From positions 1-64,000 of the IMG/VR virus record IMGVR_UViG_3300018424_000006: a DNA stretch of 64,000 bases; one strand, given 5' to 3'. Shown here piece after piece: positions 11,654 through 53,100 of the stretch. Each line of letters starts with the position of its first letter. The stretch's first letter is position 1. Below the pieces are notes generated by a model. That model was given only the letters and a program-made list of their open reading frames with translations, was not told the DNA's origin and did not search any database. A program made the translations under genes and the position numbers.

Positions 11654-13860
<2,207 letters not shown>

Positions 13861-15086: not shown

Positions 15087-15088
15087 CA

Positions 15089-15095
15089 TTCTATG
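15089..15095 (+). promoter_or_regulatory. Candidate late promoter (TTCTATG)
   Basis: TATG core as in phiKZ late promoters; the same heptamer occurs at 11224-11230 and 41777-41783. Confidence 0.4.
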
Positions 15096-15115
15096 TATAG
15101 ACAGAGGGATTGTTT

Positions 15116-25781: not shown

Positions 25782-25824
25782 CCTATCCCTAGACTTCGCG
25801 TCTAGGGATAGGTAAGTGTGCCGT
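25782..25824. terminator. Terminator-like hairpin with TGCCGT tail between convergent genes
   Basis: 13-bp stem CCTATCCCTAGAC/GTCTAGGGATAGG. Confidence 0.75.
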
Positions 25825-36429: not shown

Positions 36430-36462
36430 TACCTAATACAAAAGTACTTCATGCTTTCTTCT

Positions 36463-36503
36463 GATTGTCTAGATACCTTAACGGGTATCTAGACAGTCTT
36501 TTT
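36463..36503 (+). terminator. Intrinsic terminator
   Basis: GATTGTCTAGATACC/GGTATCTAGACAGTC stem plus T5. Confidence 0.8.
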
Positions 36504-36522
36504 ATGCTTGGAGGTATTGACA

Positions 36523-37542
36523 ATGAAAACGCTAATGGATACAAGACTAACTAATCTGCTTCATAAGGCGAATATGTCGTTGACGAAAACAGCCAGTAGC
36601 ATCAATGAAGTAGACGACGATACTGATAGTAACCAGCTATCTATTCAGGATGCCGTAGTTAGAATCTTGGCCATTGAAGCTATATTAAATGGTGAGGCAG
36701 GAGACCTACCATTTATCCATTCGTCTAAGATTACGAATGACCTTACTGTACCTACTGCCCCAGCTACAGATACTGTAGCAGGCGCTACTGAAGTATGGGA
36801 GATGCGTAAGAAGCTTTATGAGCTCCTAGATGCTTTAGCTAACTTTGATGGTAATGCCGACCCCAATGATTATCTTACTAACCTTAATCAGGTTATGGCA
36901 TGGGCAAATGCTAACACAGACACTCTAGCCGCAATGGAGCCTGCTACTCCTACAGCAGCAGGTTTTATGTCAGCCCTGCAGGCCGGTAAACTAGCCAGTA
37001 TACAAGAAGAAGCAAATAAGACAGTAGTTACTACCGATATCAACTCTACGTCTGGCACAGAAGCAGCTGCCGCTTCTATAACCAACCAACTAAAGACAAT
37101 GATAGAGCAACAGGCTCTTAGTCAGGTAACAGCTGGGGAAATAGATAACCCGACCGCAATCACTGATGCTAGGAAGTTCTCACCTAATGACATTCTAGAT
37201 ATCATCAAGAAGCATGCAGTAACTCTTTTAGATGCCTCTAAGTTTGAGCGCACTATCTATATTCCGGGTGAAGTATTGGTGCAGGAATTTGGCACTAAAC
37301 TAAGTGTACCTGATGGAGATTGGAATGGTAAGGTACATACGTCTTCTTCTAACTCTTCTGGTACAACTATTGTTAAGTTGACCCATACAGATGCTACTGA
37401 AGTAACATTAACTCATTCGGTAATAGCTCAAGAGATTTCGAATGTAACGCTTAAGGGCGGGACATGGACTATAGCAGTAACTCAAGCAAATCCAGTTATT
37501 GCTCAAGACCTTACTTTACTTTTCAGTCTAATAAAGCAATAA
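36523..37542 (+). CDS. Short fibre protein with shared N-terminal anchor domain
   Basis: Start ATG 36523 after GGAGG; first ~190 aa align with the 41814 and 47182 proteins; fibre motif 'ATPTAAGFMSALQAGKL'. Confidence 0.75.
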   Translation: MKTLMDTRLTNLLHKANMSLTKTASSINEVDDDTDSNQLSIQDAVVRILAIEAILNGEAGDLPFIHSSKITNDLTVPTAPATDTVAGATEVWEMRKKLYELLDALANFDGNADPNDYLTNLNQVMAWANANTDTLAAMEPATPTAAGFMSALQAGKLASIQEEANKTVVTTDINSTSGTEAAAASITNQLKTMIEQQALSQVTAGEIDNPTAITDARKFSPNDILDIIKKHAVTLLDASKFERTIYIPGEVLVQEFGTKLSVPDGDWNGKVHTSSSNSSGTTIVKLTHTDATEVTLTHSVIAQEISNVTLKGGTWTIAVTQANPVIAQDLTLLFSLIKQ

Positions 37543-37555
37543 TAAGGAGTCTAGT

Positions 37556-38545
37556 ATGTACTATAGACTTAAACCTAACTTTACGGTAGGGAGTCTGGGA
37601 GGCTCTATTGGTACCGATATAGCAAAATGCTTATGCAATGAAGTTTCTGATGTTGATAGCTCTGCCCTTGAAAAGTTCACATTAATTGATTATCGAAATG
37701 ATATTCCCGGTGGATGGACTAGCCGATCTGGCTCTACAATTAGTAAGGCTGACCCTTATAGCGGCGAAACTATAACACTTACTAATGCGACTGGTGGTAA
37801 TGAAGGTAGTTTCACAGAAACTAAGTTTCAACTTGCATGGAACGGAACTACCACTACTATCTCCTTAAAGTCCGTTGGCGCGCCACTTAACAATTTTTAT
37901 GAAGCAATTGGAACCGGAGATGTTATTCATATTTACATGGATAAGTGGTGTACTATAGTAGTCCCGACTAAGGCCAGTTTTGAAATGTCAACTGGAAATG
38001 GATTTATTCTCCTACATGGAGATGCCTTCTTTGAAAACGATGATTTAAGTACAGCGTACTCGTTGGCCTTTATAGGCATAAATGGCAATGGCTATGGACC
38101 CTCTAGTGGTACTAAAGGGCCAATACTAGACCTATCCACCGGAACCATATCATTTTCAAAAATAAGTTCTCCCGTACAGCTTTATACAGCAGGCACTAAG
38201 ATCCAAGCTTTAGAGGAATCTGACATAGAGTATTTCTTTTCAGATCCCAATATAGTTATGGGGCTTGACATTTCGTATTGTGCCACTCCAGGGGCGGGAG
38301 TTGAGTCAGGCGGTGTCCAGAGAGTCTGGCCCTTAGAGTCTCCTGTATTCTTCCAGCCTGGAAAAAGTAGCTTTGGAAGTTCTGGCACAGTTGCTACCTA
38401 TAATGGAATCGAATACCTAGCCTTAGGTTATCAGGCAAGTCCATCGCAGCCTGAAGAGGGAGTTAGAGTAGAGATTCCACTAAATACGGATGACCCAGAC
38501 ATAATTAGACCTAAGTTCACTTTTATCCATATCCCTTTTGCATAA
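37556..38545 (+). CDS. Putative fibre-tip/receptor-binding protein (triplet 2a)
   Basis: Starts MYYRLKP; internal 'IYMDKW.TIVVP'; ends FIHIPFA. Confidence 0.55.
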   Translation: MYYRLKPNFTVGSLGGSIGTDIAKCLCNEVSDVDSSALEKFTLIDYRNDIPGGWTSRSGSTISKADPYSGETITLTNATGGNEGSFTETKFQLAWNGTTTTISLKSVGAPLNNFYEAIGTGDVIHIYMDKWCTIVVPTKASFEMSTGNGFILLHGDAFFENDDLSTAYSLAFIGINGNGYGPSSGTKGPILDLSTGTISFSKISSPVQLYTAGTKIQALEESDIEYFFSDPNIVMGLDISYCATPGAGVESGGVQRVWPLESPVFFQPGKSSFGSSGTVATYNGIEYLALGYQASPSQPEEGVRVEIPLNTDDPDIIRPKFTFIHIPFA

Positions 38546-38557
38546 GGAGACAAAGCA

Positions 38558-39619
38558 ATGTTCTTTAAGTTTAGGGTCAATCCTAGCACCCCATTAAATA
38601 CCTTTGGCTCTCTAGTTCCAGATTTTATAAAGGCATTTAGTGGAGAAACTGACCCGAGTGCATTCGACAATATTACGTTGTTGGAAGCTACCGGTAAAAT
38701 ATTCCCGGATAATTGGGAATATAAACTGGAAGGTAGGACATTTAGTATTTACGGGAAAGATCCTAATAACCCGCAAGGCTTGGATTGTAAAACTGGTATT
38801 ACTATAGATCTAGGTATCAACGATGCCGATTTTAAAGGCAACTACGATATAAACCGTTTTGATAACGCCGGCAATATTATCAAGACTCACATGAGCTATA
38901 ACCTTCAAGGGAATACAAATTTTAATGCCCAGGCATTAGCTCTCGCCAACGTTTATGCAGACTATTGTTTCTATATAGATGAAGAGACCTTTGTATTCCT
39001 TCCTTTAGAGTGGACCAATACCAGTCTTACAACTACTACTTATTTTTGGGGAAGAAATGCCGGGTTCTTTATGGGATTCTCTAGTCCATTTAACCCTTCT
39101 GCAGATTATAGTCAGTCGACTGGTTTCTTTCTTCAGTCAATAACTGGGGATGTTTATGCGCCATCCATAGGTTTTATTGATGATTATCCCGTTTATAAAG
39201 ACCATCCATATTCATCAAAGAGGTTTAATCCGGGAGGGAGCTTTACTAGATTTTATTGGAGGTCTTCTGTAGATAGATTTATGGCTCTTAATGCCGATGT
39301 AACTTCTTTGGAAGCTATAGTTAGGCATCCGTCTGATAACAGACTAGCGAACGCTTGGTTTGTTAATAGCTATCGGAGCGGTATAAATAACACGAATACT
39401 CCATCTAACTGCTACGTATGGAAGGGTAAGCGAGTTAAGAAATGGATGAGGTTTGTTCCGGCAAACGCTCTTAGGAGAAAGGTGCAAATGGATGGCAAGA
39501 AAGGTTACCTCATGGCGCTACCTATCGCAGAGCTACCCACTAATGGGTCAGTGGCGACAACAATATCTGAATATTATTTAGATAAAACAATTATTATTTT
39601 TATGCCTATAGAGGCGTGA
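38558..39619 (+). CDS. Putative fibre-tip/receptor-binding protein (triplet 2b)
   Basis: Starts MFFKFR; internal 'FYIDEETFVFLP'; ends IFMPIEA. Confidence 0.55.
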   Translation: MFFKFRVNPSTPLNTFGSLVPDFIKAFSGETDPSAFDNITLLEATGKIFPDNWEYKLEGRTFSIYGKDPNNPQGLDCKTGITIDLGINDADFKGNYDINRFDNAGNIIKTHMSYNLQGNTNFNAQALALANVYADYCFYIDEETFVFLPLEWTNTSLTTTTYFWGRNAGFFMGFSSPFNPSADYSQSTGFFLQSITGDVYAPSIGFIDDYPVYKDHPYSSKRFNPGGSFTRFYWRSSVDRFMALNADVTSLEAIVRHPSDNRLANAWFVNSYRSGINNTNTPSNCYVWKGKRVKKWMRFVPANALRRKVQMDGKKGYLMALPIAELPTNGSVATTISEYYLDKTIIIFMPIEA

Positions 39620-39631
39620 GGAAATAGAATT

Positions 39632-40600
39632 ATGTTTATGCATCTAAAGCCGAAAACTACGGCAAATATATATCCCCATCAAGCAGTGCAAGATATCTTT
39701 GATATCGTAGAAGGTGAGACTTTATCTGAAAATTTAACGTACTATAACATTGAAACTCTAGATAGCCGTTATAGTACTACAACATGGAAACGTATTATCG
39801 ATGGATCTTACATCCATATCATTTCCCCTGATCCGGATGATCCAGCCGGCAAATGGGGCGGGTTCTCCCTATTGACTACTACCAACGGAAGGATGTTTAG
39901 CTGTCTATCTGATGACGGGGTGACTGCCACTTCAGGATCGTCTTTTATTACAATTGCAGGTAATGCCAGTTATTGCCAGTTTAACGACACAACGGCAACT
40001 GAACTATTTGTCTATATGGACGAGCAGACTTTATTAATTATACCTACAGACGCATCCTACTTTACAGGTAGTAATCCAGGCTTGTGGGCCACTCATTCAA
40101 AGCGGCTGGCATCGGATGACCTACCTGCTAACTACAGTACCGTTAGTACTACATATTCGGTAGTAACAACTACCACTTCTTCCGCTAATCCAAGAAGTAT
40201 TTGTTGTAGCGTGCCCGGGTTTGGTAGCTATAAAACACACGTCAATGAGCAAGCCGTCTTTAGATACAACGGCAAAACAGTAGCAACTCAATCTTCAGTA
40301 ATGACAAATGCTCCGGGCACTGCAGATAACATGGTCGTTGGTGGACTTTACCTCGGTAGTGACACAACTGGATCGCTCCCGGTTTACAGAACTCTTAGGG
40401 ATGATAGTCAGCTTCTTATCCAGCCAGTAACTGCATCTGGCGCATACGTCGGCCAGACTTTACTGATAGGTCCTTCTGGTAGTGAGAAAGAATATATCTG
40501 CCTTGGGTTCTCTATGTCAACAAGTAATAGCTCAGCGGCTACCACTTCTATACTGGCGTCAAGGAGTGGTCTACTCTTTATGTATTTACCTAAGGGGTAG
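39632..40600 (+). CDS. Putative fibre-tip/receptor-binding protein (triplet 2c)
   Basis: Starts MFMHLKP; internal 'VYMDEQTLLIIP'; ends FMYLPKG. Confidence 0.55.
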   Translation: MFMHLKPKTTANIYPHQAVQDIFDIVEGETLSENLTYYNIETLDSRYSTTTWKRIIDGSYIHIISPDPDDPAGKWGGFSLLTTTNGRMFSCLSDDGVTATSGSSFITIAGNASYCQFNDTTATELFVYMDEQTLLIIPTDASYFTGSNPGLWATHSKRLASDDLPANYSTVSTTYSVVTTTTSSANPRSICCSVPGFGSYKTHVNEQAVFRYNGKTVATQSSVMTNAPGTADNMVVGGLYLGSDTTGSLPVYRTLRDDSQLLIQPVTASGAYVGQTLLIGPSGSEKEYICLGFSMSTSNSSAATTSILASRSGLLFMYLPKG

Positions 40601-40603
40601 AGT

Positions 40604-41143
40604 ATGGCGGAATATACAGCAATATCTCTAAACTATTTGGAGTCACTAGTATCGTCACTGAATGTAATAGGGGACCCGGTAAGTCCGGGTCGACTTGTCG
40701 TAAAAAAGGGTACCTATACTTCAGAAACTATTCCTGAAGTTAGCTTCGTCCCTGACGGACTAAATAATTCATTTAAAAGTCTATCAGATTCTAGTCTAAT
40801 TATCCTTAATGGTAATTATACTGCTTACGACGTTAGTAATGAAATATTCATTTTAAATCCCGTTTTAGACTTCAGAACCATCGACGGAGTTCAACTGATA
40901 ATCTTTCCAGATTCATTTGAGTTTGAACCTGTATTAATGGATCTTCAAATGAAGCCTTCTGAGATAGTAGGTTCTAGAGCTATAGTCTTTAATGGACAGG
41001 TTCAGCCTAACTTTAAAACTAAACTAGAATCTACGGCGGCAGTTACTATAAATGGTATTAAAAGACTAACTCCTACTTTTGTTCCATTTGGTGCTGAACC
41101 GGATAAAGAGATAGTAGTAGATACTGATATTGCAATCATGTAA
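40604..41143 (+). CDS. Hypothetical protein in fibre operon
   Basis: 179-aa ORF, tightly packed. Confidence 0.7.
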   Translation: MAEYTAISLNYLESLVSSLNVIGDPVSPGRLVVKKGTYTSETIPEVSFVPDGLNNSFKSLSDSSLIILNGNYTAYDVSNEIFILNPVLDFRTIDGVQLIIFPDSFEFEPVLMDLQMKPSEIVGSRAIVFNGQVQPNFKTKLESTAAVTINGIKRLTPTFVPFGAEPDKEIVVDTDIAIM

Positions 41144-41152
41144 GGAAAAGAA

Positions 41153-41725
41153 ATGATAGAGAAATTCATAACCTCTAATAGAGAGGCAGGCTTTGTCTTC
41201 TCCAAAATAGAAGGGGAGAAAGGAGACTTCTTTATTCACGAAGTTCCTGAAGAACGTGATATGAAACCAGTCAGTATTCCTGTATTGGTTAAAGGTGTTA
41301 TTGAAGGGAATCGTAACGGTAAGTCCTATGGCATCATTAAAGCTAAGGATACGTTCGAAAGCCAAGATGCGATGTGGGGCCCTAGGTTCTATAAAGCTGG
41401 TACTTACCATATGCGTATCAAAGAGCCTACGGTCCATTACTGTATCTATTCGGTTAAAGATAACAAAGTAATTGTTCAAAAGAACTTTGTTATCCTAAAA
41501 CCCGGAGAATCTATTCGTCAGTTTATGGGTAGTCATGTAGCCGTAATAGGCGGCTGTACTTATAACGATAGAGAGTATGTAAAGACTCGTGTATTTCCAG
41601 TAAGTGGAATTGGAAGCGATATCTTAAACTCTACTGAAAAACCTATTATTGTAGTAGCTTTCTCGGTGGAAGATGAAGATAAAGTGGAAGTAGAAACTGA
41701 TTTCCCAGAAGAACTTATTATCTAA
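41153..41725 (+). CDS. Hypothetical beta-rich (cupin-like) protein
   Basis: SD AAGGA; 190 aa. Confidence 0.65.
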   Translation: MIEKFITSNREAGFVFSKIEGEKGDFFIHEVPEERDMKPVSIPVLVKGVIEGNRNGKSYGIIKAKDTFESQDAMWGPRFYKAGTYHMRIKEPTVHYCIYSVKDNKVIVQKNFVILKPGESIRQFMGSHVAVIGGCTYNDREYVKTRVFPVSGIGSDILNSTEKPIIVVAFSVEDEDKVEVETDFPEELII

Positions 41726-41730
41726 ATAAA

Positions 41731-41770
41731 GACCTACTATCCTTAACCGGGTAGTAGGTTATTCTGCTGT
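41731..41770 (+). terminator. Terminator-like hairpin
   Basis: GACCTACTATCC/GGGTAGTAGGTT stem followed by ATTCTGCTGT (TGCCGT variant). Confidence 0.65.
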
Positions 41771-41813
41771 TTCTGATTCTATGACCTAATACTAAAGCAT
41801 TAGAGAGAAAGAA

Positions 41814-44800
41814 ATGAAAGACTTACTCAATAACTTATTATTGAAAGTTAATGCTGCTAACAAGAAAGTTGCAGATAGTATAAATCTAGTAGACGACGAC
41901 ACGGATCTGAACGAGTCTGCTATTGCAACAATCCAGACAGAATTACAGAGTATCTCGGATGCTCTGGCGGGAACTAGCGGTAACCTTTTATTTGAAAGTG
42001 ATGTACTCCAATCCTTAGGTACTCCAGAAGCTCCTGCTGCAGGTTCGGTAGTCGATGCCTCCTTATTATGGCAGATGAAGAAAGACTTAGATTCGCTACT
42101 GACTTCCTTTGCTAATTTCGATGCTGATGGAAACCCTAACGACTATATAGACAATCTAAATACAGTACTTAGCTGGGTGGATGCTAACAGTGCATTCTTA
42201 GACGCTATGTCTCCAGCTACCACTACTCAGTCTGGTTTCATGTCTAGTCTACAGGCAACTAAACTAGAAGGTATTGAAGAGGGTGCTAATAAGACAATAT
42301 TAAATAGTGATCCTTCAACCAACAATGCTAATATAGCAGCCAGTACGGCGCTGACATTTGCCCTTAGAGAATTGATAAATAATCTTGAGCTAAATAAAGC
42401 CGCTGCCGACCATAGTCATCCAGTAGCAACTGACATTGCTGATGGATTAATGTCAAAAGAAGATAAGTCTTATCTAGATTCTTTACCTGCGGTTATCTCT
42501 GAACAAATAGCTAATAATTCTAGCTCTGGAAATTTTGAAGGCTTAGGTATCTTTAGAGCAGGGGCGATAACTGGGGGACATCAGCCTATAATTTCAGAGA
42601 CTTATTATGGCAAGAACTTCTATATAGCCAGTAGAGATGGAACTAGACGCATTGCCTCTACTAATACTCATAGTACTATGTATTATGAAATAGGAGACTT
42701 TAAAGAAGGCGTTGTTACTGAACGCTTGAACACGTATGAGTTATTTGGTGATAATGTAGGCACCTTGGATAACCATTGCGTATGGGCAAATGAGGACCTC
42801 ACGCAGTTATTAATAGGTTCTAACTATAATTATGGGTTCTTCTTACATCTATGGAGAAACGCTACTGATGATGGGTGGGACTTTAAGCGCTACGACAGAC
42901 CTGCTGATTTAACCAGTACTGAATTCAGCGGTTTTGGATACGGTATGGCTGCTACTAAGGATATGTCTAGGATTGTTGTTGGCACCAGTGCTTCTGGCAA
43001 TAAGATCTATTCTTTTAGCGTTTGGGAATGGAACGGTAGCGAATATATAGAGTCTTATAGAGAGCCTTTTACTTATAACTCTTCTACTCGTAATCATGGA
43101 CTAGGAACGAATTTCGAGATGTCTGATGACGGCAGTATTCTATTTGCCGGCAATATGTACTCTACAAATAGTACGGGTCAAACCACAGGCGTAATTGAAG
43201 TCTATAAATGGAATGACGACACAAGCCGCTATGAACACTACGATACTATCGAGGGGCAGAGTACGAACTCAGGAAATAACTTTGGCGCGCAAACAAACCA
43301 AGATATGTTTAGAATTACGAATGATGGTACTGAGTTATTCCTAGGTGATCGATTCCAAGTAGTAACTGGTTCCTACTCCCGAGGTTGCGTAACTCGTTTC
43401 ATAGACAATGGTACAAGTTTTGAAAAGGTAAGTGATGTAATCACAAATAGAATTCCTAGTGTTAATAGTTCCGGGTACTTCGGACAAAGCTTTACTGTAT
43501 CGGAAGATAAGCAATATCTTTTTGTTATTGATCCATACAGACGCTTGCAGATAGGTTCCCATTACTACAACTATATTTCTTTCAGCGTTCATAAGCGAAC
43601 AACCAATAGCGACTATGAAGAACTCTCTATGATGTTCATGTCGGATTTCGACTTCCCGTCAGTAATTACAGATTGGAGTATGGGTCAGTCTTTACCTTTT
43701 GCACAAGGTGCAGGATTTGGAATGGACTTTAAGGATGGTAAAGTATTTATGTCTGCCTATAAAAACTATGGCGGCTATAAAGGCTATACTTTCCAGCTTG
43801 AAACTTCCACAGACTGGAAAGAATCTGGCCCGGATAAAAACTTTACAACTCTTGTAGCGAATACCGGTTATCTAGATAGAGGTCCCGGCCTATGGCGAGC
43901 TAGATGGATCTATGAAATGATCTTGCAGTACTCCTCTGCTTCTAGTAGCGAACGGAATGATATAGCTACGGCTTTACAGAATTCTTTATTCAATAGTAAT
44001 GGAACTACCTTCTCTCCCATGCATGCCGAAACAATAGGCTATGAAAACTTAAAGACAGAGAAAGTATTAGAATCTTCAAATACGACTCCTTATGGAGATA
44101 TGTTGATTCCTGAAATTATCTACAAGAATGGTAAGTTATTTGCGTGTAGTTTTAATGGTCAGAATCCATCCTTGACCAATAAGTCAGATACTATCAATAT
44201 CTTTAGCGTAAATGGCAGTGAGTTTACTCATCAACATTCCATAGGTGTCAGAGATGAAGGACTAAATGATCTCGATACCCTCCATTTTGTGAGTAATGAT
44301 CACAGAGTTATTTGCGTAAGAGACAATGCCAACTTCTATTTCTTCATTGATGATGATGCAGGAGGCTATGTATTAGCACCGACTACACTTACTTTAACGA
44401 GTAGTTCCTACTCTCAATTCTGTGAAGTGAACGGCAAGGTCGTGGTCTTCTCTAGTAATGAGGTAGTGGGTAATTCCAGTAACCATGGTAAATTATTGGA
44501 AGTAGTAGTTGACTATGTAGGTAAGGATGTCTCGGTTGCTGATTATTTTGTGCCTCCCGAAATAGCCTCTAACTCACTTTGGGGACGTTCAGGTAGAATC
44601 TCAGAAGACGGTTCTGTCATAGTAGTTAGTATTAAAAACGGACGAAATGATATTTCTGGTAACCTTCTCATATATAGATGGAATGGTTCTGGTTATGACC
44701 AGATTCACGACTATGTTTATGACGATGTTGTCGAAGGTTATAACTCTAATTCTAGTAGCTATAACGGCTGGCCCTATAACGTAGATATGACTCCTGATGG

Positions 44801-46937
44801 AAAAGTCATTGTAGCAGGTACTATTCAGGCTAGTAGGGAAGTAGGCGAGTTAGTTGTCTTTCAAGATAATGGTACTACGTTTGATAAAGTCTGCAGTTTA
44901 CCAGAACTGAAGCTTTACGAATACAGAAATGGAGAAGGTTTAGTTAGAGGATTTAAGATATCTGATGATGGACTTACCATAGCCCAACATACTCTAGCAG
45001 GTACGTTTGTATGGGCAAGGGCTAGCCTTAACGATGTCTTTGAAGCAACTACTTGGTTAGTTGATGCAAACACTCGTATAGGTGGCCAGGAGTTTATTGG
45101 TAATGATAAGTTCCTTTACCTTCGTACGCCTCGTTATAATCGACAAGACTATGCTCTGATAACGGCCGAAAATGGCTCATTTGTACCATTGAAGGCAACT
45201 GGAAATAAGGACATCCTAACAGCAGGAGAGAAGGACAATAACTTTATACCTTCCAGAAGGAAACTTAGAGATGATATAAAAGCCGTTGTAAGAGAAGAAG
45301 CTTTAGCCCCAACTATAATTACTAAGAATGGCGTTAAGGATTACTCTCGTAGTAGTAGTGGGAAGTTTGCCTATTCGACTAAGTATGATAGGGATATCTA
45401 TTTAGCCGGAAGCAATACCGTTGTTTATCGTCCTTCAGACTTAACCACTTTGAGAACAGTACCTAGACCGACTGCAAAGTCAGTCTGCTCTGTCAACATT
45501 ATTGATCAGGATAGATTTGTGATTACAGATCTATCTAGTACGACAAACAACGTTCATGTCTATAGTTACGTTAGCGATAGCTTTACGACATTTACTTATC
45601 CCGGAAATATAATAGACTCAACGGTAGATACGGAACAAGAGATACTTTGGATTCATGATCAAGATACTAATGTAATTTCTTCATTAAGACTTAGCGACGG
45701 AGGTGTACCTAGCGACATAACGTTTACTGTAAATACGTCTACATCTAAGCTTCTTTATGTAGGAGGTAATACTGTCTTACATATTCCTAATAAGTCGGAT
45801 GCTGAAGATGCTCGTTTACTAGATGTTTCTTCTGGGAATGTTTTAGTAATTGACCCTAGTCATAAAGACGCTATGAACAATAACTTCAGTACGCTTATTT
45901 ATGATGAAGGATACATAGTTCTGATTAGCAGCGAAGGGACTCCTGAGTTTAAATCATATGGTATGCAGGTTAGTCGATTACTAACCCATGAAGAACTAGG
46001 GGGATTTGATGGCAGGGAATCGGCAGGTAATGCCATTGGGTCTTTACGCCCCGGCGAGGTTTACCGTACTTCCACTCAACTTTCTTCTTATGAGTCGAAT
46101 ACGTCAGCTACAAGAAGTAGTATTCTGTCAAGCTTTGTGTCGAGAACAGAGGCTGGACATAGTACGGTAATGAATTCTCAATATTGTACTACTCAGGGAT
46201 CATGGGGGAGCATACTAAGTTCTAAGGCTACTTTATCTGACGATACCTATTCCACTACATGGGGCTACCATGCAGCAGAGACGACTCCGACAACTGCCAA
46301 TGCAACTGCAAGAATCGACTCTAAGACAGGAATAGGACATTTTTCAGGAGGAACTAGTACGACAGGTGCTGACTATGCAGAATACTTTGAAAACTTAAAT
46401 GAAGAAGAAGTAATGGTTGGTACTATTGTTACATTGGAAGCGGGTAAGATAAGGAAGGCTACCGAAGGGGATGATATACTAGGTATCATTTCTGCTACAG
46501 CAGGCGTGGTCGGTAACGATGCTCCAATTAGCTGGAATAGTCGTTATCTAAGAGATGAGTTCGGACGCATAATGACTGAGAAGGTTACTATGGTTAAATT
46601 TACTATAGGAACTAAGGAGTTTGAAATGCCAAGAGCGCAGACCTCTGTCTTACCTGAGGTATATGAAGAGTATGTTGTTGACGTACCTTTAGAAAATCCA
46701 GAGTTCAATCCGGACTTAGCTGGGGATTATATCCCTCGTTCAGAACGGAAAGAAAAATGGTCTCTAGTGGGATTACTAGGGCAGCTTTATGTACGAGTCA
46801 ATGAGGATATTACGACTCGCTATATAGGTGCTACAGGATATGGTTCGACAAAGAAAACGTCATTACGGCTAATGGAAATGACAACACCTTTCGATCTTAC
46901 CAAAGGCTATGGAGTGGCCAAATGTTATTTTAAATAA
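41814..46937 (+). CDS. Long tail fibre/appendage: shared anchor, FG-GAP-like beta-propellers, C-terminal Peptidase G2 autocleaving chaperone
   Basis: Fibre repeats (GFMSSLQATKL, DGLMSKEDK); FG-GAP-like 'FGYGMA..DMSRIVVG' and 'LGTNFEMSDDGSILFAG'; 'GADYAEYFE...GIIS...RDEFGR...YIPRSER..W..VGLLGQ' as in phi29 gp12-type domains. Confidence 0.85.
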   Translation: MKDLLNNLLLKVNAANKKVADSINLVDDDTDLNESAIATIQTELQSISDALAGTSGNLLFESDVLQSLGTPEAPAAGSVVDASLLWQMKKDLDSLLTSFANFDADGNPNDYIDNLNTVLSWVDANSAFLDAMSPATTTQSGFMSSLQATKLEGIEEGANKTILNSDPSTNNANIAASTALTFALRELINNLELNKAAADHSHPVATDIADGLMSKEDKSYLDSLPAVISEQIANNSSSGNFEGLGIFRAGAITGGHQPIISETYYGKNFYIASRDGTRRIASTNTHSTMYYEIGDFKEGVVTERLNTYELFGDNVGTLDNHCVWANEDLTQLLIGSNYNYGFFLHLWRNATDDGWDFKRYDRPADLTSTEFSGFGYGMAATKDMSRIVVGTSASGNKIYSFSVWEWNGSEYIESYREPFTYNSSTRNHGLGTNFEMSDDGSILFAGNMYSTNSTGQTTGVIEVYKWNDDTSRYEHYDTIEGQSTNSGNNFGAQTNQDMFRITNDGTELFLGDRFQVVTGSYSRGCVTRFIDNGTSFEKVSDVITNRIPSVNSSGYFGQSFTVSEDKQYLFVIDPYRRLQIGSHYYNYISFSVHKRTTNSDYEELSMMFMSDFDFPSVITDWSMGQSLPFAQGAGFGMDFKDGKVFMSAYKNYGGYKGYTFQLETSTDWKESGPDKNFTTLVANTGYLDRGPGLWRARWIYEMILQYSSASSSERNDIATALQNSLFNSNGTTFSPMHAETIGYENLKTEKVLESSNTTPYGDMLIPEIIYKNGKLFACSFNGQNPSLTNKSDTINIFSVNGSEFTHQHSIGVRDEGLNDLDTLHFVSNDHRVICVRDNANFYFFIDDDAGGYVLAPTTLTLTSSSYSQFCEVNGKVVVFSSNEVVGNSSNHGKLLEVVVDYVGKDVSVADYFVPPEIASNSLWGRSGRISEDGSVIVVSIKNGRNDISGNLLIYRWNGSGYDQIHDYVYDDVVEGYNSNSSSYNGWPYNVDMTPDGKVIVAGTIQASREVGELVVFQDNGTTFDKVCSLPELKLYEYRNGEGLVRGFKISDDGLTIAQHTLAGTFVWARASLNDVFEATTWLVDANTRIGGQEFIGNDKFLYLRTPRYNRQDYALITAENGSFVPLKATGNKDILTAGEKDNNFIPSRRKLRDDIKAVVREEALAPTIITKNGVKDYSRSSSGKFAYSTKYDRDIYLAGSNTVVYRPSDLTTLRTVPRPTAKSVCSVNIIDQDRFVITDLSSTTNNVHVYSYVSDSFTTFTYPGNIIDSTVDTEQEILWIHDQDTNVISSLRLSDGGVPSDITFTVNTSTSKLLYVGGNTVLHIPNKSDAEDARLLDVSSGNVLVIDPSHKDAMNNNFSTLIYDEGYIVLISSEGTPEFKSYGMQVSRLLTHEELGGFDGRESAGNAIGSLRPGEVYRTSTQLSSYESNTSATRSSILSSFVSRTEAGHSTVMNSQYCTTQGSWGSILSSKATLSDDTYSTTWGYHAAETTPTTANATARIDSKTGIGHFSGGTSTTGADYAEYFENLNEEEVMVGTIVTLEAGKIRKATEGDDILGIISATAGVVGNDAPISWNSRYLRDEFGRIMTEKVTMVKFTIGTKEFEMPRAQTSVLPEVYEEYVVDVPLENPEFNPDLAGDYIPRSERKEKWSLVGLLGQLYVRVNEDITTRYIGATGYGSTKKTSLRLMEMTTPFDLTKGYGVAKCYFK

Positions 46938-46954
46938 TTAACACATTTCATAGC

Positions 46955-46991
46955 AGAGGGTACGGATTTCCGTACCCTCTTTTTTTGCCGT
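46955..46991 (+). terminator. Intrinsic terminator with TGCCGT tail
   Basis: AGAGGGTACGGA/TCCGTACCCTCT stem, T-tract, then GCCGT. Confidence 0.88.
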
Positions 46992-47181
46992 TAACCGGTA
47001 ATAATAAAGTATTAGTTTTGTGTTTTTTACGCACTACAAAAATTCTGATCCTTTGTAGAAAATGGCCACAGAGTCATTTGAAGTACTACCCTTCTAAGCT
47101 GGATTTTTAAGTGTTACAATGGATGTAGTTTAGTTGGAACATTGTCCTTTTTTGCGACAAATAGTCATAGGAGACTAGGGT

Positions 47182-50100
47182 ATGCACCTCTCTAATCAAC
47201 TCGAAACCTTGTTAGCCAAAGCATCTCAGGCCTTACAGGAAACGAGCCAAAGTATAAACTCCGTAGATTCTCAGTCGGATAACAACGTTGTTCAGATTGC
47301 TACACTCACAAACCAAATTCAACAGGTTTTAGATCTTCTATCTGGTATTACCAATATTAATGAATTTCTTTCTGACCAAGATATTATCTCGGACTTGGAT
47401 ACTCCAGCACCTCCTGAGAATAATAAATTGGTTCAAGCCTCAACAGTTTGGCAAATCAATAAAGAGCTAGAATCCTTACTAGATACTCTAGCCGCTTTCG
47501 ATGGCGATGCTGATGGCGTCGATTATGTCGAGAATTTAAATTCAGTTATGACTTGGGCTCGGGCCAACAAAGACATACTGGATGCGATGGCACCCGCTAC
47601 GCCAACGCAAACTGGTTTCTTTTCAAAGGAAGACAAAGCCAAGTTAGATGCACTTGAGCAGGGCGCGACTGCGACCAATCTTTCTGACGATGAAACAACG
47701 AATGATTCAGCTACCGCAGCTAGTACTGCATTGACATTCAAATTAAAAACTGCCCTAGATGACCTTGCTCAAACTGTTAGTGACATTCAGGCTAATGGCG
47801 GAGGAGGCGGTGGCGGAGGTTCCATTACGGATGCTGATGGTGCCGCAATCGAATCTGCTCTAGATGCTCGTTATAACAGTACAGCATGGCGTGATGGATT
47901 GTCCGAATGGACAAATACATTACCTACTATAGTCGATATTAATCAGACTACTAAGGCAACTCAAGACCTAATTATTAACTTAGATAATTATGGTTCTGAT
48001 CCTGACGAAGGTCAGACCTTGACGTATACTTGTTCGCCAATGACTAATGTCACATTAGCGGGTTCCATACTGACTTTCAATAGCCCTAATGTAGGTACCG
48101 AAGTATTTACTATTACGACTGACGATGGAGCAGGCGGTGGCGCGAGCGCAACACTAACGATAACGGTTACTCGTTTCGGATATGTTGAAATAGTAGATAA
48201 GACTGAATATGCTGTTCAGGGAATCGCCAAAGTTATTACACTTGGCCCTACTCATGACGATGAGAATGATCAGGCGGTCTATACTGTTACCGGTAGTACA
48301 GATTTCGTAATGGGCCCAGGTACTAACGAAATAACATTCACGGGTACTACTGTTGCTTCCGTTCCTCTTTCTGTACAAGCAGACGATGGTAATGGGAATA
48401 TATCTAATGCTACTATTACCGTTGAAGTAGAAGCGCCAAGTACTAATCCTTGGCCTGTTGTACAGAACGTGTCACCGCAATATGTAGCTAAGGGAGCGAC
48501 CTTTAGTTTAACGCCAGTAATTACTAACCCAGCTACGGCTGGTGAAGTGAACTGGTTTAAAGAGTTTGGGCCAGATGACCTAGAAGTTAATCCTATTACT
48601 GGCGAGATTACGTGGAATACGCCTTCTGATTGGCAAGCAGAATCTTTTCACGTTATTATCAGGGCAGTTAACTTAGATGCAACAGATGGGATGCTTGAAT
48701 TCATACTACACTACGGAAAGACTGCCGGCGATGTAGTTATGGTTGGTCCTAGTCATTCCTATAAGACATGGCAAGAAGCGCATCCTAACCTTGTTTCAGG
48801 ACAATCTATCATTATTGAAGATGGTAGCTATTCTGATTTTGGTATGGGTATAGGCCGTTTTAATAACGGTAACTGGTATCCGCCTTCAGGTACAGCTACG
48901 GCCCTGACATGCGTTATGGCAGAAACAGTGGGCGGTGTTACGCTAACTGGTGATGCAGGCGTTTCATTTGTTCTCTGGAGTGCGGGAAAGAGTGAAGCTC
49001 AGGACATATCCTTTAGCGGGTTATTCGTTAAAGGCGGTCCGTCCATCAATTTCAATGGGGATAGTAACGATAAACTAAATACTCGTGTTAAGCGCATTAA
49101 AACTATTGCCTGTGGTTGTGATGGCGATGACGCCATTCCCATTTATAGTCGTATTGCCGACGACATACTCATTGAAAGCTGCTATGCTTTTGGTGGAGGT
49201 CGCTATAAGATATCGACTAACGAGTCAACTCGTGTAGTTCAGCGTCGTAATTTAGGACGTATGGATAGAACTGATATGGATGGCGTAGAGGACCCCAAAG
49301 GCACATTCATGGCGTACAATACGTGGGAATTCTACTGGTCTAACCTTATTGATCTTGATGCCCTAGATCGTTTCCGTTCCAACGGTGAGATAGTTGGGGC
49401 CTTCGGTACCCCTGTAACAGGTACCGGAACTACACCTGAAGGTTCGTTTGGTATCATTACTACCTGTATCCACCTTAACTCTGAAAATCGTCTTTGTAAC
49501 TTCGATTCCCAACTCTCGTCTGCAGGTGGCCATTCTGACGTCAAGATGGAACATGTTGCAAGTTTCAATATTAAACCGGACTGGGCCTATGGTTATTCAT
49601 GGGGCTCTGGTTGGTTTGACCGGATGAGTATTGTTAATATTCAACCATTGGCTCCTGTTGACAGTGCTATGATAAATACGGGCGGTCGTTACTATTGTCG
49701 AGGCATGACTAACTCGATTATAGATCAGGTTGATATAACTACTAATGGCGGCACTGGTGACTTTTTCCGAGAACTAAATACTGGTCCGGTAGACATACCG
49801 TATAATGGCGGCGTATCCCGTACAGTTGAAAAGTATGGCGTCTATGGTAACAACATAACCAATGTCGATACGGCAGGTATGATTGGTACAGGCGCACAAT
49901 ACGAAATAAATACTACGACGGTTGATGTTTCAGCAGCCTTTGACTACTTGACTCGCGTAAATGACGACCATGCGCTTGCAGGTCAAAAGGGAGCCGAGGT
50001 ACTTTATCTGAAAGGGAAGTCTGGGCGTTTCTTTGGAGACGCCGGATATGATGAAGATACGAAGATTCCTATGTGGCCGTTTCCACTTCAGCATAAGATG

Positions 50101-53100
50101 GCTGAGAAAATGCGTGAGTGGACTTACACTGGACCTACTTATAGTGGTTGGGATTACACTAACCGAACTGTTGGGGCTAGTGAAACGGCAGACGGTAATC
50201 GTGGCGCATCTGCAATTGGTGAGACCATTACCAATTACGTCTGGGGAGCCTTAGGAAAAACAGTACCTCCGTTTAATGTAAAGGCCGTTCCGGAAGACGG
50301 TGGCTGCACGATTGTTTGGGAGAAGCACGCCCCGATTTCTCGTGATACCATTACCGGCTATAGAATTTACGACTACAGTCAGGTAGACGGTTCCTTGAGT
50401 AATCCTCGCACTATTTCGCGAGATTCTCACAGACACCAGATAACCGGTTTATTGAATGGTTTTGATGCAACGTTTGTCGTGACAGCTATTGATTCTGTTA
50501 AAGGGGAGTCGGGATACGGATATCCGGTGACGGTTAGACCGAATGGTACGCCTACGGTCAAGCCTACTATAACTAATGTGACTGGCAACTTAAACCTAAT
50601 TGAAGGTACAAACTTTACGTTAGGGGCGGTAGTTCAGGGTTACGAAACGCTCTCATGGCTACGGAACGATGTTGTTATCAGTTCTGTAACTGAAGAATCG
50701 TATTCGTCCGTAGCCGCTTTGGTCGATGATGGTGCAGTTTATAAAATCCGTGCCGGTAACCCGGTAGGCATTACCGAGGTCGTCATTTCGACACTCTCCG
50801 TAATTGCCGTGGATTCTACTCCTCCGTCTGTCACTATTGCATTAAATGGTGATACGTTAAACATTGGCTTAGTTGATAACCTCTATCAGAAAGCTGATAT
50901 TAGCCTGCAGCTTTTTGCTGATGATACCCCTGTCGGAAACTCGTTTTCTGGCGCAGTAAGTTCCATAGATTTACTAAATGAAAATTTACCTTTGGGTAAC
51001 CTTTCTTTACGTGTGGAAGCCACTGACCCGCAAAACAACACAGGGACGTCTAGCACAGTACAGTATACAGTAGGTAGTCCGATCTTTACTGATGACTTTA
51101 CAGACGCAAGTCAATGGCTTGCTGGTATTTCTGCGGTAGGTAATATTGGTACTGTAACTGAAACTGCTAGAACCTCAAGTGACGTCTGGACGAATACGAC
51201 CGGCTTTACGTTAAAGTGGAAGCAGAAGATCTTGGATCAGATGGGCGATTACGTCCTTTTCAATATGGATATAGGTATCGCTGTAGACGGTAACCGTGCA
51301 GGTTCAGTCCGACTACGTTTTTATAAACGAAGCGGAAGTAACTCCCTTGCCAGCTATACTAGCCGAGCGGGCGTCGCTACAGGCTTTACTGATACGTTTA
51401 ATGCTGGTAACCCTACTTCGGATACTGGCGGTAACGAACCTTTAATTCAGTATGAGGCAACTGCAATAGGCACTACCTTCACGTTAAAGGCAGATGGTGT
51501 AGTTATTCTGACTGAAACCCTACCGGAAGACATCGGACCGTTCGATGGTAGAATTCAATTTGACCCGGATACTGCTGGAGATATTGAAATTTCGGATATA
51601 GTTGCATATGGAGAAGAAATTCCCGTTAATGCTGCGCCTACCGTAGATCCCCAAACAGTAAATGTAGGAGTTGGTCAAAGCCGAGTCATAACTCTCGGAG
51701 AGCTAACGGATTCTGATGGAGATACGTTGGTCTATAGCGTTACAGGTTCAAGCGACTTTGTTGCAGGACCGGGCGCAAACGAAATAACCTTTGAATCAGC
51801 TAGTGCCGGAGTCCATACGCTTACCGTGACTGCTGACGACCAGAAAGGCTTAAGTACTTCAAACACATTAACGGTTATTGTATCCATTCCACGTCCAGTA
51901 AGTCTAAAGTATGCTTTTAGCGGCTGGGCAAGTATGCAGAATAATCTAGGCGGCCAAAATGATGGACTAGATCCTTCCCTCTATAATCTTGTCGGTAAGA
52001 TGATGACTGATAATGGCATTCTTGGCTACGTCAGTGATTTTGAATACCTTCCAGAAGGGTCTCCTGACATTGACGGAACAGTCGCTACTGCACACGCAAA
52101 TTCCACCGATTCCGAAGTATTTATTATTTCGGCCTATCCGGGTTCTGACGGTATTTGTGCAGATCCTGCTACGTCATCTGGCGCTAAGGGCTCCGGTGCC
52201 GCCGGCTGGGTTCAGAGAGTAGTTGATATTGCTACGCTAGCTGAAAGTAACGGCATGCATCCCGTTCTGTTCCAAGCATGGGGTAATGAAAATGCAAAAG
52301 CGGACTGGGGCAATGCTAAACTTAACACCGATGCCATTCTAGGCATTAAACAGATTGGGGTTATTCGCACAGCAGAAATACTCAAAGCAGTGTACGACGA
52401 TACTGCTTCATATGCAACAAACGTTGCCAATGGCAGGACTAAGTACGAACCTCCTGTGGATACCATGTGGTCTGGCGATATCTCAGATACAATTAATGGT
52501 TCTTATGCAATGCTTTATGCAAATGCGCTAGCTACCATGAAATATATTTCGGGAATAAGTGCTGCTGACAACGCATATGTCGTACCAGCGTACTACCAAA
52601 TGCCTGCTGCATTAGTTAGTCTCATTAAGCAGAAGGTAGATGAGATTCAGGTAGAAACAATGAATGTCTACATACCGGTTGGCGTAGCGCCATCTGCAAA
52701 CGACATTAATGTAAACGCATATCAGGGTGATAGCTATGCCTATGATTTAGAGGCATTAACGCTTATTTCTGATGATGTTGCGATTATACCTGCAAACTTT
52801 ACGCTTTCTAGCGCCACTGCTGCTCACTATACCAGCGCTAATATAGCTAACGGTATTTTGACGATAGTGCCCGGGAGTTCTTATGAGGGCCTTTCCCCTA
52901 TTATAGTAACTTATACGGATGCTGATGGAAACATTACACCTTTTAATGTTAACGTCAATATAAGTGCTAAGCCATCTTCAGATGCAGTAAAGGTCTGGAT
53001 AGATTTTGGTAAAGGGTCGGGTAGTGCATTCGGAACCGACGGGAATCTTTATAACCACGCTACTGCACTCGATGGCGGCGGTGAAGTTATAAACCTTATT

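What the first reader, a model, noticed from the sequence alone, without database searches (positions are those of the whole stretch)
36523..47800. One ~190-aa anchor domain reused on three appendages of 339, 1707 and 2618 aa
The N-termini of 36523, 41814 and 47182 align along their length (L.NLL.KA...SIN.VD...D.N...P.AP...V..A..VW...K.L..LL..LA.FD......DY..NLN.V..W..AN...L.AM.PAT.T..GF.S....KL..I..GA..T) and then diverge completely. Each gene follows a terminator, and TTCTGAT occurs upstream of all three (36459, 41771, 47043). Inference: interchangeable plug-in appendages that compete for, or hetero-oligomerise at, one virion socket and are separately transcribed.
Basis: partly seen in the sequence, partly recalled or inferred. 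Interest (0 to 1): 0.62.

Follow-up and report, generated by a model that had tools for sequence, protein, structure and literature searches.

The report
Shared plug domain on giant phage fibres
An uncultured phiKZ-like giant phage from salt marshes puts the same ~190-residue N-terminal module on four tail-fibre-like proteins of very different size. The module is most likely the plug that fixes each fibre to one kind of socket on the tail, a new domain used in a well-known modular design.

Summary
The N-termini of the 339-, 1707- and 2618-aa proteins share 37-44% identity over about 190 residues (E 1e-33 to 1e-40), then diverge. A fourth copy (892 aa) lies just outside the window.

The genome is a 219.8-kb phiKZ-like jumbo phage. 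The module has two parts:
- Residues 1-135 are an undescribed helical domain. It has no Pfam or PHROG match, and only seven other clusters carry it among the 150 best hits listed from 1.84 billion representatives.
- Residues 136-195 are one copy of a very common trimeric fibre-stalk repeat (phi29 head fibre, monocin FtbO).

Four pieces of evidence bear on the mechanism:
- All four genes sit in a variable island. It lies downstream of a gene whose N-terminus is homologous to phiKZ gp131/133/134/135, the baseplate fibre-attachment domain.
- Relatives carry 0, 2 or 15 genes in this island and different cargo at the same positions.
- A complex prediction passes its controls narrowly (0.70 against 0.46). 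It packs the anchor's first helix against the C-terminal helix of that gp131-like protein as a 3+3 helix bundle.
- Truncated natural anchors keep exactly that first helix.

Each anchored gene follows a strong hairpin. TTCTGAT is not significant.

Verdict: a new anchor family in a known modular design. The socket is predicted, not shown.

The parts
36523..37542 (+). Anchored gene A1 (339 aa): anchor plus a ~140-aa C-terminal domain. First gene of a cassette that runs to 41725.
   Evidence: A full-length orthologue, P0007, lies in a related metagenomic contig.
36523..36927 (+). Anchor N-domain of A1 (aa 1-135). Helical, with two conserved acidic loops (INxVDDDTDxN and FDGDADxxDY). No known family.
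   Evidence: Residues 3-31 and 35 form the predicted interface.
36928..37107 (+). Fibre-stalk repeat of A1 (aa 136-195; ATxTxxGFMSxxxxxKL...). One copy of a widespread trimeric fibre repeat.
41814..46937 (+). Anchored gene A2 (1707 aa). Anchor, an HxH motif plus a second stalk repeat, two related beta-rich modules with propeller-like blades, and a C-terminal intramolecular chaperone.
41814..42383 (+). Anchor of A2 (aa 1-190).
46212..46928 (+). Peptidase_G2 / IMC autoproteolytic chaperone domain of A2 (aa 1467-1705).
   Evidence: PF11962, E 2.3e-54. phrog_4775 pre-neck appendage. PDB matches to phi29 gp12 and Dpo31, E about 1e-29.
47182..55038 (+). Anchored gene A3 (2618 aa). Anchor, a nine-glycine linker, Ig-like (Big_9) domains, a weak fn3 match, large unassigned beta-rich parts, and a C-terminal module duplicated in 61572. 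First gene of a cassette that runs to genome position 64729.
47182..47766 (+). Anchor of A3 (aa 1-195).
53377..55032 (+). C-terminal cargo module of A3 (aa 2066-2617). It is 51% identical to aa 104-672 of the separate gene 61572-63593.
   Evidence: E 8e-161. Atlas lead to Ig plus PD40-type propeller, below the reliable score.
61572..63593 (+). Unanchored paralogue of the A3 cargo module (673 aa), in the same cassette.
36463..36498 (+). Hairpin with a T run directly upstream of A1 (16-bp stem, dG -24.7). It is followed by TTTTTATGC.
   Evidence: A contig from an RNA library ends at 36454 (weak).
41731..41760 (+). Hairpin upstream of A2 (12-bp stem, dG -18.5). No clean T run. A TATG lies 19 nt downstream.
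46955..46980 (+). Canonical terminator hairpin between A2 and A3 (11-bp stem, T7).
35614..36429 (+). gp131-like adaptor (271 aa): phiKZ gp131/134/135-type N-domain, an HxH motif and a long helical C-terminus. Its last helix (aa 245-271) is the predicted socket for the anchor.
   Evidence: It is directly followed by an anchored gene in five of six related phages, this genome included.
27202..28197 (+). Second gp131-like N-domain protein (331 aa).
   Evidence: phrog_2163, E 2.4e-38. phiKZ gp131, E 3e-19. PhiPA3 gp150.
28200..28778 (+). Third gp131-like N-domain protein (192 aa). It ends in a helix.
55038..58112 (+). 1024-aa protein in the A3 cassette. Its first ~350 residues are shared with the 378-aa product of 63593-64729, which may be a second-tier anchor family.

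Best explanation
The window is the start of a 219.8-kb phiKZ-like (chimallivirus-type) jumbo phage assembled from salt-marsh metagenomes. Four genes, three of them in the window, encode trimeric tail-fibre-type appendages that share an N-terminal attachment module.

The module has two parts:
- Residues 1-135 are a lineage-specific helical domain with two conserved acidic loops.
- Residues 136-195 are one unit of a common trimeric fibre-stalk repeat that starts the shaft.

Proposed mechanism:
1. Each fibre forms a homotrimer.
2. The first helix of its anchor (about residues 3-31) packs against the C-terminal helix (residues 245-271) of the short gp131-like protein encoded directly upstream (35614-36429), giving a 3+3 helix bundle.
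3. The N-domain of that gp131-like protein sits on the baseplate periphery, as the gp131/133/134/135 N-domains do in phiKZ.

In this lineage, then, the gp131-type proteins would be short adaptors, and the receptor-binding or enzymatic cargo would sit on a second, exchangeable plug. Because all four fibres carry the same plug, they would occupy equivalent sockets. phiKZ has twelve fibre sites.

Each anchored gene opens its own unit behind a hairpin. The island they occupy gains and loses cassettes between related phages.

Shown: the homology, its composite nature, its rarity, the synteny, the cargo exchange, the hairpins, and the gp131-like homology of the neighbouring genes.
Inferred: virion location, trimer state, and separate transcription.
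Predicted only: the 3+3 bundle with 35614.

My odds are about 0.75 that this is a fibre attachment module and about 0.4 that the 35614 C-terminal helix is its socket.
For: - Homology of the four N-termini.
- Fibre nature: the Peptidase_G2/IMC domain of A2; the stalk repeat shared with phi29 gp8.5-type and monocin FtbO trimers, plus an HxH motif; Ig-like domains in A3.
- Phage type: major capsid protein and other phiKZ-type families; portal gp129 and baseplate gp139 orthologues.
- Locus: 27202, 28200 and 35614 carry the phiKZ gp131/133/134/135 N-domain. In phiKZ that domain forms the fibre base with a six-helix bundle under gp130 (PMC13250141).
- Synteny: the 35614 orthologue is directly followed by an anchored gene in L009, L012, L013 and L017. 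The cargo lengths there are 334, 266, 1160 and 1029 aa. L010 has a 1568-aa cargo at the position of the fourth gene.
- Complex prediction, 3 x 35614[136-271] with 3 x anchor[1-140]: score 0.70, best of 3 controls 0.46. That mark was reached by 58 of 80 solved complexes and by 2 of 110 mismatched pairs. The runs agree in at least 97% of contacts and the partner's pLDDT is at least 74. The interface is 245-271 against 3-31 and 35.
- Independent support: the natural truncated anchors (P0146 and the L017 338-aa protein) retain exactly helix 1 and the first acidic loop.
- The Vibrio phage Yong relative lacks the anchor, and its 35614 orthologue diverges over the last ~60 residues and continues into another domain.
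- Transcription units: the only gaps of 35 nt or more in the 21-gene block lie before 27202, before 35614 and before the four anchored genes, each of the four with a strong hairpin. No comparable hairpin was found elsewhere in the window's part of the block.
Against: - There is no virion proteomics or imaging; the phage is uncultured.
- The complex job is unlike the tool's calibration: six chains, and my own shallow alignments of 4 and 10 rows.
- Its margin is narrow (+0.24, with 0.20 needed). The control that kept the anchor and swapped in an unrelated protein still scored 0.46, so helix bundling is partly unspecific.
- The monomer AlphaFold2 model of the anchor is poor (pLDDT 42).
- One relative (L019) has the gp131-like gene, with a helical C-terminus, but no anchored gene beside it within a 14-kb contig.
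- Two other gp131-like proteins (27202, 28200), or the conserved 197-aa protein (34976), could be the socket instead.
- The fourth anchor's first helix is divergent.
Confidence: 0.6

Rival explanations
1. Same plug, different socket or branching. The anchors dock on another protein (28200, 27202, the conserved 197-aa product of 34976, or a gp130-like platform), or on each other. The result would be a branched or hetero-oligomeric fibre complex, as in Ackermannviridae and Alcyoneusvirus.
For: - Three gp131-like proteins exist, and two of them end in helices.
- phiKZ builds a hetero-hexameric base from paralogues.
- The fourth anchor's first helix is divergent, which suggests a different partner.
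- The downstream genes in each cassette, and the shared N-terminus of 55038 and 63593, suggest further tiers.
- L019 has the 35614 orthologue but no anchored neighbour.
Against: - Only the 35614 pairing was tested, and it passed its controls.
- The 35614 orthologue and an anchored gene are adjacent in five of six related phages, this genome included.
- Fibres of 339 to 2618 aa, one of them with a trimerising IMC domain, cannot form regular heterotrimers along their length (inference).
Confidence: 0.25
2. The shared region is only a common trimerisation and shaft start, inherited by duplication. It is not a docking element, and attachment is made elsewhere or by other proteins.
For: - Residues 136-195 are a generic stalk repeat found in more than 1400 proteins, mostly in internal tandem arrays.
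- The N-domain is helical and has heptad-like spacing.
Against: - The rare part lies at the extreme N-terminus, which is where fibres generally attach (established knowledge).
- Truncated natural variants keep helix 1 rather than the stalk repeat.
- The replacement controls for the anchor scored 0.00 against 0.70.
- The anchor is kept while cargo is swapped at fixed genomic positions.
Confidence: 0.1
3. They are head or neck (collar) fibres rather than baseplate fibres.
For: - The stalk repeat is best known from the phi29 head fibre, and the IMC domain from the phi29 pre-neck appendage.
- The HxH plus coiled-coil part of the gp131-like proteins matches a 'tail collar fibers gp4' chain, 9d93.
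Against: - The neighbouring genes carry the gp131-type N-domain, which cryo-EM places on the phiKZ baseplate periphery.
- The phiKZ neck whiskers are a different protein, gp34.
- The stalk repeat and the IMC domain occur in all kinds of fibres.
Confidence: 0.04
4. They are not virion proteins, for example secreted or cell-surface proteins that share a leader-like N-terminus.
For: There are no direct virion data.
Against: - All recognisable domains are of fibre type.
- The genes lie in the late structural block, downstream of gp131-like genes.
- The N-terminus is an amphipathic helix, not a signal peptide.
Confidence: 0.01

Closest known systems
phiKZ gp131/gp133/gp134/gp135 paralogue set (gp131-like N-terminal fibre-base domain)
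   Same: - It occurs in the same phage group and the same locus.
- Several proteins share one N-terminal module and differ downstream.
- The shared modules assemble at the fibre attachment site together with a helical bundle (PMC13250141).
- This genome has three such proteins.
   Different: - The anchor described here is a different, unrelated domain. It does not match phrog_2163, and its HMM finds nothing in phiKZ gp129-146.
- Here the gp131-like proteins are short (192-331 aa), and the large cargo (up to 2618 aa) sits on the second module. That implies a two-tier adaptor and plug arrangement not described for phiKZ.
Branched multi-RBP systems with T4 gp10-like docking domains (CBA120 TSP1-4, G7C, phiKp24, RaK2/K64-1)
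   Same: Many receptor-binding proteins are encoded in one cluster. Each has a conserved N-terminal attachment part and a variable C-terminal part, and the cluster changes by module exchange (PMC9700779; PMC6872550, PMC10253068 and PMC11414711, listed).
   Different: - No T4 gp10-like or other known docking domain was detected.
- The anchor is helical rather than a beta-rich XD-type domain.
- Only one cargo shows a weak beta-helix signal (58127).
Podophage RBP1 branching domain plus RBP2 conserved docking peptide (KP32, K11, KP34)
   Same: A short conserved N-terminal element of one fibre plugs into a dedicated site on another protein (PMC13352976, abstract).
   Different: The phages are unrelated, and so are the sequence, the size and the predicted geometry (a 3+3 helix bundle).
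phi29 gp8.5 head-fibre repeat and monocin FtbO stalk
   Same: Residues 136-195 of the anchor belong to this repeat class. The A3 profile matches FtbO at E 6e-6, and the proteins it finds carry PF11133-region matches. FtbO is a solved trimeric stalk with HxH metal sites (PMC11830787). A2 has the HxH motif at residues 200-202.
   Different: There is one copy per anchor (two in A2) instead of long tandem arrays. PF11133 itself did not reach threshold on the window's proteins.
phi29 gp12 pre-neck appendage, Dpo31 and endosialidase-type fibres with a C-terminal intramolecular chaperone
   Same: The C-terminus of A2 is a clear Peptidase_G2/IMC domain. That marks an obligate trimer which cleaves off its own chaperone.
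   Different: Only A2 (and the 1029-aa relative in L017) has it. The rest of the protein is unrelated.

Membership tests
phiKZ gp131-like N-terminal fibre-base domain (phrog_2163/13857) | Sequence homology of the N-terminal ~160 residues to gp131/133/134/135. | tested here: not met
   The A-anchor proteins have no such hit, and the anchor HMM finds nothing in phiKZ gp129-146. The neighbouring genes 27202, 28200 and 35614 do meet it (E 3e-19 to 7e-5; phrog_2163 E 2e-38 to 2e-15).
phi29 gp8.5 / FtbO-type trimeric fibre-stalk repeat | The ~40-60-residue motif AT.T..G(L/F)MS..DK.KL..I..GA, recognisable by profile. | tested here: met
   Profile positions 137-190 hit more than 1400 proteins, with up to 20 tandem copies each. 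Tested hits carry PF11133-region matches. The profile matches FtbO chain 9j1l at E 6e-6. PF11133 did not itself pass on P0001-P0003, so membership rests on the profile chain.
phi29 gp8.5 / FtbO-type trimeric fibre-stalk repeat | Forms a trimer in the assembled particle. | not testable with these tools
   The trimer state is inferred from the solved FtbO and gp8.5 structures (and general knowledge) and from the IMC domain of A2.
Peptidase_G2 / intramolecular-chaperone fibres (PF11962) | A C-terminal IMC domain above the Pfam gathering score. | tested here: met
   A2 residues 1467-1705 score 184.6 bits against a cut-off of 25. PDB matches to 3gqh, 3suc and 28lx have E about 1e-29. This applies to A2 only.
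T4 gp10-like branching/docking domain RBPs (CBA120, G7C, phiKp24) | A detectable gp10-like (XD) domain in the N-terminal part. | tested here: not met
   No Pfam, PHROG or PDB sequence hit of that kind on any anchored protein. Tested by sequence only; no usable structure model was obtained.
EF-hand Ca-binding helix-loop-helix | A 12-residue loop of the form DxDxDGxIxxxE flanked by helices. | tested here: not met
   Calmodulin matches are weak, E 0.008-0.09, at profile positions 97-126. The loop FDG(D/N)ADxxDY lacks Gly at position 6, a hydrophobic residue at position 8 and Glu at position 12 (reading). Metal binding by the two acidic loops remains possible but was not tested.
Rho-independent terminators upstream of each anchored gene | A GC-rich hairpin followed directly by a T run. 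| tested here: inconclusive
   Met at 36463-36498 and 46955-46980. At 41731-41760 and upstream of the fourth gene there are strong hairpins without a clean T run.

The most novel reading that the evidence does not exclude
In this branch of phiKZ-like phages, fibre attachment has become a two-tier plug-and-socket system. The gp131-type baseplate domain is reduced to a short adaptor that ends in a helix. A new helical plug zips onto that helix as a 3+3 bundle, possibly tuned by its two conserved acidic loops. The same socket could then accept any of several giant fibres, and whole fibre cassettes could be gained or lost (0, 2 or 15 genes in relatives) without changing the baseplate.
Probability: 0.25. 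Interest if true: 0.6.

Novelty: new variant of a known kind. Interest (0 to 1): 0.45.

Why it matters
The 2026 phiKZ structural atlas could not build atomic models of the distal fibres. How chimallivirus-type phages attach and exchange their receptor-binding proteins is therefore still poorly understood.

This locus offers a concrete hypothesis that can be tested by co-expression: a defined ~30-residue helix on the fibre and a defined ~27-residue helix on a gp131-like adaptor. Natural deletion variants and cargo swaps among relatives already point to the same element.

It also defines a new domain family (residues 1-135) that can be used to mark fibre genes in uncultured jumbo phages. Their giant fibre proteins otherwise have no annotation.

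The general principle, a conserved N-terminal anchor with variable cargo, is well established. The value of this finding is as a new case and a specific structural prediction, not as a new concept.

Tried and rejected
- Close relatives in cultured phages: none by megablast or tblastn.
- Pattern scans: IMG/VR scans with two alignments found nothing.
- Word-index protein searches: with P0001 and with the P0002 anchor they found only the query's own proteins.
- AlphaFold2 of the anchor (4-row alignment): pLDDT 42, unusable, so no fold search was run.
- AlphaFold2 of the shared A3/61572 cargo module (2 rows): pLDDT 32, unusable.
- ESM Atlas look-alikes: for the anchor, only generic helical hits. 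For 61572, Ig plus PD40-propeller leads below the reliable score.
- PDB sequence searches: nothing for A3 or the fourth protein.
- A weak BLAST hit between the 32968 N-terminus and the anchor (E 0.31) was rejected by profile-profile comparison (probability 0.2%).
- P0054 looked like a full-length anchor match but lacks the N-domain.
- TTCTGAT as a shared signal: rejected.
- Sigma-70-type promoters are not enriched. That is expected for a phage with its own RNA polymerases.
- EF-hand membership: rejected on loop geometry.
- Rfam and tRNA scans of the window: nothing.
- Searching the 228-kb relative's whole record was not possible.
- RNA evidence: only assembled contigs from one metatranscriptome were available. 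These cannot show transcript ends or strand.

Full report
**1. The observation**

The window holds three plus-strand ORFs at the coordinates given: 36523-37542 (339 aa), 41814-46937 (1707 aa) and 47182-55038 (2618 aa). Their first ~190-195 residues align with 55 invariant columns. Pairwise BLAST gives E 1e-33 to 1e-40 at 38-42% identity, and there is no further collinear similarity after about residue 200.

A search of the whole genome shows a fourth gene with the same N-terminus just beyond the window, at genome 64823-67501 (892 aa). A profile of the four finds no fifth copy.

**2. The genome**

The window is the first 64 kb of a 219,819-bp virus record with direct terminal repeats. The record has a phiKZ-type major capsid protein (phrog_3231), about 38% identical to that of Vibrio phage vB_VmeM-Yong. 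It also has other phiKZ-group families, including a split RNA-polymerase subunit, and orthologues of the phiKZ portal gp129 and baseplate protein gp139.

The DNA occurs in salt-marsh metagenomes from separately filed studies. One of these may be the source sample.

**3. The module is composite**

A profile of the four N-termini was run against 1.84 billion cluster representatives. It returned 1484 hits at E up to 0.001. Nearly all of them match only profile positions ~137-190, often many times in tandem (up to 20 stretches).

That segment (ATxTxxGFMSxxxxxKLxxIxxGA...) is a common fibre-stalk repeat:
- The proteins found carry matches to the phi29 head-fibre family PF11133.
- The profile also matches the solved monocin side-fibre protein FtbO (9j1l, E 6e-6). 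FtbO is a trimeric rod with HxH iron sites (PMC11830787).
- The 1707-aa protein has such an HxH (HSH at 200-202) followed by a second repeat.

Residues 1-135 are rare. Among the 150 best hits only seven clusters outside this genome carry them: P0007, P0031, P0062, P0074, P0080, P0087 and P0146. No Pfam or PHROG family matches.

This N-domain is predicted helical. Its most conserved features are an N-terminal amphipathic helix, an acidic loop INxVDDDTDxN, and a second acidic helix-loop-helix FDGDADxxDY. Weak calmodulin matches to the second loop (E 0.008-0.09) do not satisfy EF-hand geometry.

**4. The cargo**

- The 1707-aa protein ends in a clear Peptidase_G2 intramolecular-chaperone domain (PF11962, E 2e-54). 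This domain is found in phi29 gp12 and in depolymerase tailspikes, and it marks an obligate trimer. Its middle holds two related beta-rich modules with propeller-like blade motifs.
- The 2618-aa protein has a nine-glycine linker after the anchor, Ig-like Big_9 domains and a weak fn3 match. Its last 550 residues are 51% identical to a separate gene, 61572-63593, in the same cassette. An Atlas lead suggests Ig plus a PD40-type propeller (below the reliable score). My own fold of this module failed.
- The 339-aa and 892-aa proteins have unassigned cargo.

**5. The neighbourhood**

Three genes of the block (27202, 28200, 35614) carry the phiKZ gp131-type N-terminal domain. They match phrog_2163 at E 2e-38 to 2e-15, align directly to phiKZ gp131/133/134/135 at E 3e-19 to 7e-5, and hit PhiPA3 gp150/gp154.

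The 2026 phiKZ atlas shows six such N-domains plus a six-helix bundle forming each fibre attachment site beneath gp130, with twelve sites per baseplate (PMC13250141). In this genome these proteins are short (331, 192 and 271 aa). 35614 consists of the gp131-like domain, an HxH motif and a long helical tail.

Gene spacing is informative. In the 21-gene plus-strand block from 27202 to 67501, the only intergenic gaps of 35 nt or more lie before 27202, before 35614, and before each of the four anchored genes. Each of those four gaps holds a strong hairpin (dG -18.5 to -26.7 kcal/mol, z -3.6 to -8.0). Two of the three hairpins in the window qualify as canonical terminators. No comparable hairpin was found elsewhere in the window's part of the block.

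**6. Comparison with relatives**

- In four related contigs (L009, L012, L013, L017) the orthologue of 35614 is directly followed by an anchored gene, but the cargo differs. It is 334 aa (the same cargo as here), 266, 1160 and 1029 aa. The 1029-aa protein has the anchor, a different middle and an IMC domain.
- In L010 a 1568-aa anchored protein occupies the position of the fourth gene, upstream of orthologues of 67912 and 68442.
- The interval between the 35614 orthologue and the 67912 orthologue holds no gene in L019, two in L017 and fifteen here (31 kb).
- The nearest cultured relative, Vibrio phage Yong, keeps the gp131-like genes and has giant proteins in the locus, but lacks the anchor. 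Its 35614 orthologue diverges over the last ~60 residues and continues into another domain.
- Two natural variants have truncated anchors, and both keep helix 1 and the first acidic loop. P0146 lacks helix 2 and the following loop. The 338-aa protein of L017 has only helices 1-2.

**7. The docking test**

I submitted three copies of 35614 residues 136-271 and three copies of anchor residues 1-140, each with my own alignment.
- The score was 0.70 and the best of three controls 0.46.
- That mark was reached by 58 of 80 solved complexes and by 2 of 110 mismatched pairs.
- The runs agree in at least 97% of contacts, and the partner's pLDDT is at least 74.
- The confident interface is 35614 residues 245-271 against anchor residues 3-31 and 35 in all three copies, that is, a 3+3 helix bundle.

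Caveats: the job differs from the calibration, the alignments are shallow, and the margin is narrow. The control that kept the anchor and replaced 35614 still scored 0.46, so part of the signal is generic helix packing. The result supports binding but does not show it.

The interface coincides with the element retained in the natural truncations. That evidence is independent of the model.

**8. Transcription**

- TTCTGAT is not enriched and not consistently placed.
- phiKZ late promoters have the motif TATG, with the G as the start site (PMC4666361).
- In this genome a composite of hairpin plus TTTATGC(CGT) recurs in intergenic regions. TTATGC occurs 12 times against 3.2 expected, and TGCCGT 12 against 2.7.
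- A TATG lies between the hairpin and the start codon for three of the four anchored genes, but not for 47182.
- In a metatranscriptome library, a 2454-nt contig covering the upstream genes ends at 36454, 9 nt before the first hairpin. Only read-sized pieces lie downstream. Contigs cannot prove RNA ends.

Separate transcription is therefore plausible but unproven.

**9. Interpretation**

The best reading is that the four proteins are homotrimeric tail fibres. They share an N-terminal plug that docks, through its first helix, on a short gp131-like adaptor, and the adaptor sits on the baseplate periphery. The island evolves by exchange of cargo and of whole cassettes.

Still open are whether the four fibres compete for identical sockets, use the three gp131-like proteins selectively, or carry further branches. 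The non-anchored genes in each cassette, and the shared N-terminus of 55038 and 63593, point to possible branches.

The design principle is long known from T7-like, Ackermannviridae, Alcyoneusvirus, phiKp24 and phiKZ gp131 paralogues. The new elements are the anchor domain itself and the predicted two-tier arrangement.

Noticed in passing
Genome-wide. In the window at 1935, 11212, 19269 and 23976 (minus strand).: A ~30-nt motif, AGxxxxTTxxAATTCTATATTACTTxAATG, occurs about 24 times. Almost all copies are intergenic and on the minus strand, ahead of minus-strand genes. It is probably this phage's early (virion RNA polymerase) promoter. I recall a similar TATATTAC-type early-promoter core in phiKZ, but did not check that.
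   Followed up: partly
Window 15052-15109, 36463-36510 and 46955-46995, plus genome 75.7, 100.8, 104.4, 119.4 and 207.9 kb.: Intergenic hairpins are followed by a conserved tail, TTTATGCCGT(G)TTCT (TGCCGT 12 times against 2.7 expected). This may be a combined terminator and phiKZ-type TATG late promoter.
   Followed up: partly
Window 53377-55032 and 61572-63593.: The last 550 residues of the 2618-aa fibre are duplicated as the body of a separate 673-aa gene in the same cassette (51% identity). An Ig-like unit of 61572 also matches three places in the giant protein.
   Followed up: partly
Window 55038-58112 and 63593-64000 (runs on to genome position 64729).: The 1024-aa and 378-aa proteins share their first ~350 residues (26% identity, E 8e-12) and a second ~80-residue unit. 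This is a further shared N-terminal family inside the third cassette, possibly a second-tier anchor.
   Followed up: no
Window 37556-40600.: Three consecutive genes of similar size (329, 353 and 322 aa) show only faint collinear N-terminal similarity (E 0.03-0.2) and match no family. They may be distant paralogues that assemble on the 339-aa anchored protein.
   Followed up: no
L019:10816-11252 (related 14-kb metagenomic contig).: A relative has the gp131-like adaptor gene directly followed, after a 436-nt gap, by the orthologue of 67912. The whole fibre island is absent there.
   Followed up: partly
Window 46938-47181.: At 244 nt this is the largest intergenic gap of the fibre block. It has a terminator at its 5' end and no ORF, Rfam family or TATG before the 2618-aa gene.
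   Followed up: partly
Window 47794-47820.: A run of nine glycine codons lies directly after the anchor of the 2618-aa protein. It is likely a flexible hinge between plug and cargo.
   Followed up: no
Window 25824-27068 (minus strand).: A 414-aa gene (phrog_3337) is transcribed divergently from the first gp131-like gene. It has the position, strand and size of phiKZ gp130, the fibre platform (427 aa), but shows no BLAST similarity to it.
   Followed up: partly
Window 3594-6038, 11866-13842 and 24401-25768.: The left part of the window encodes an SbcC-like nuclease subunit, an NAD-dependent DNA ligase and an RNase H-type ribonuclease. As in phiKZ and phage Yong, the RNase H gene lies near the fibre locus.
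   Followed up: no
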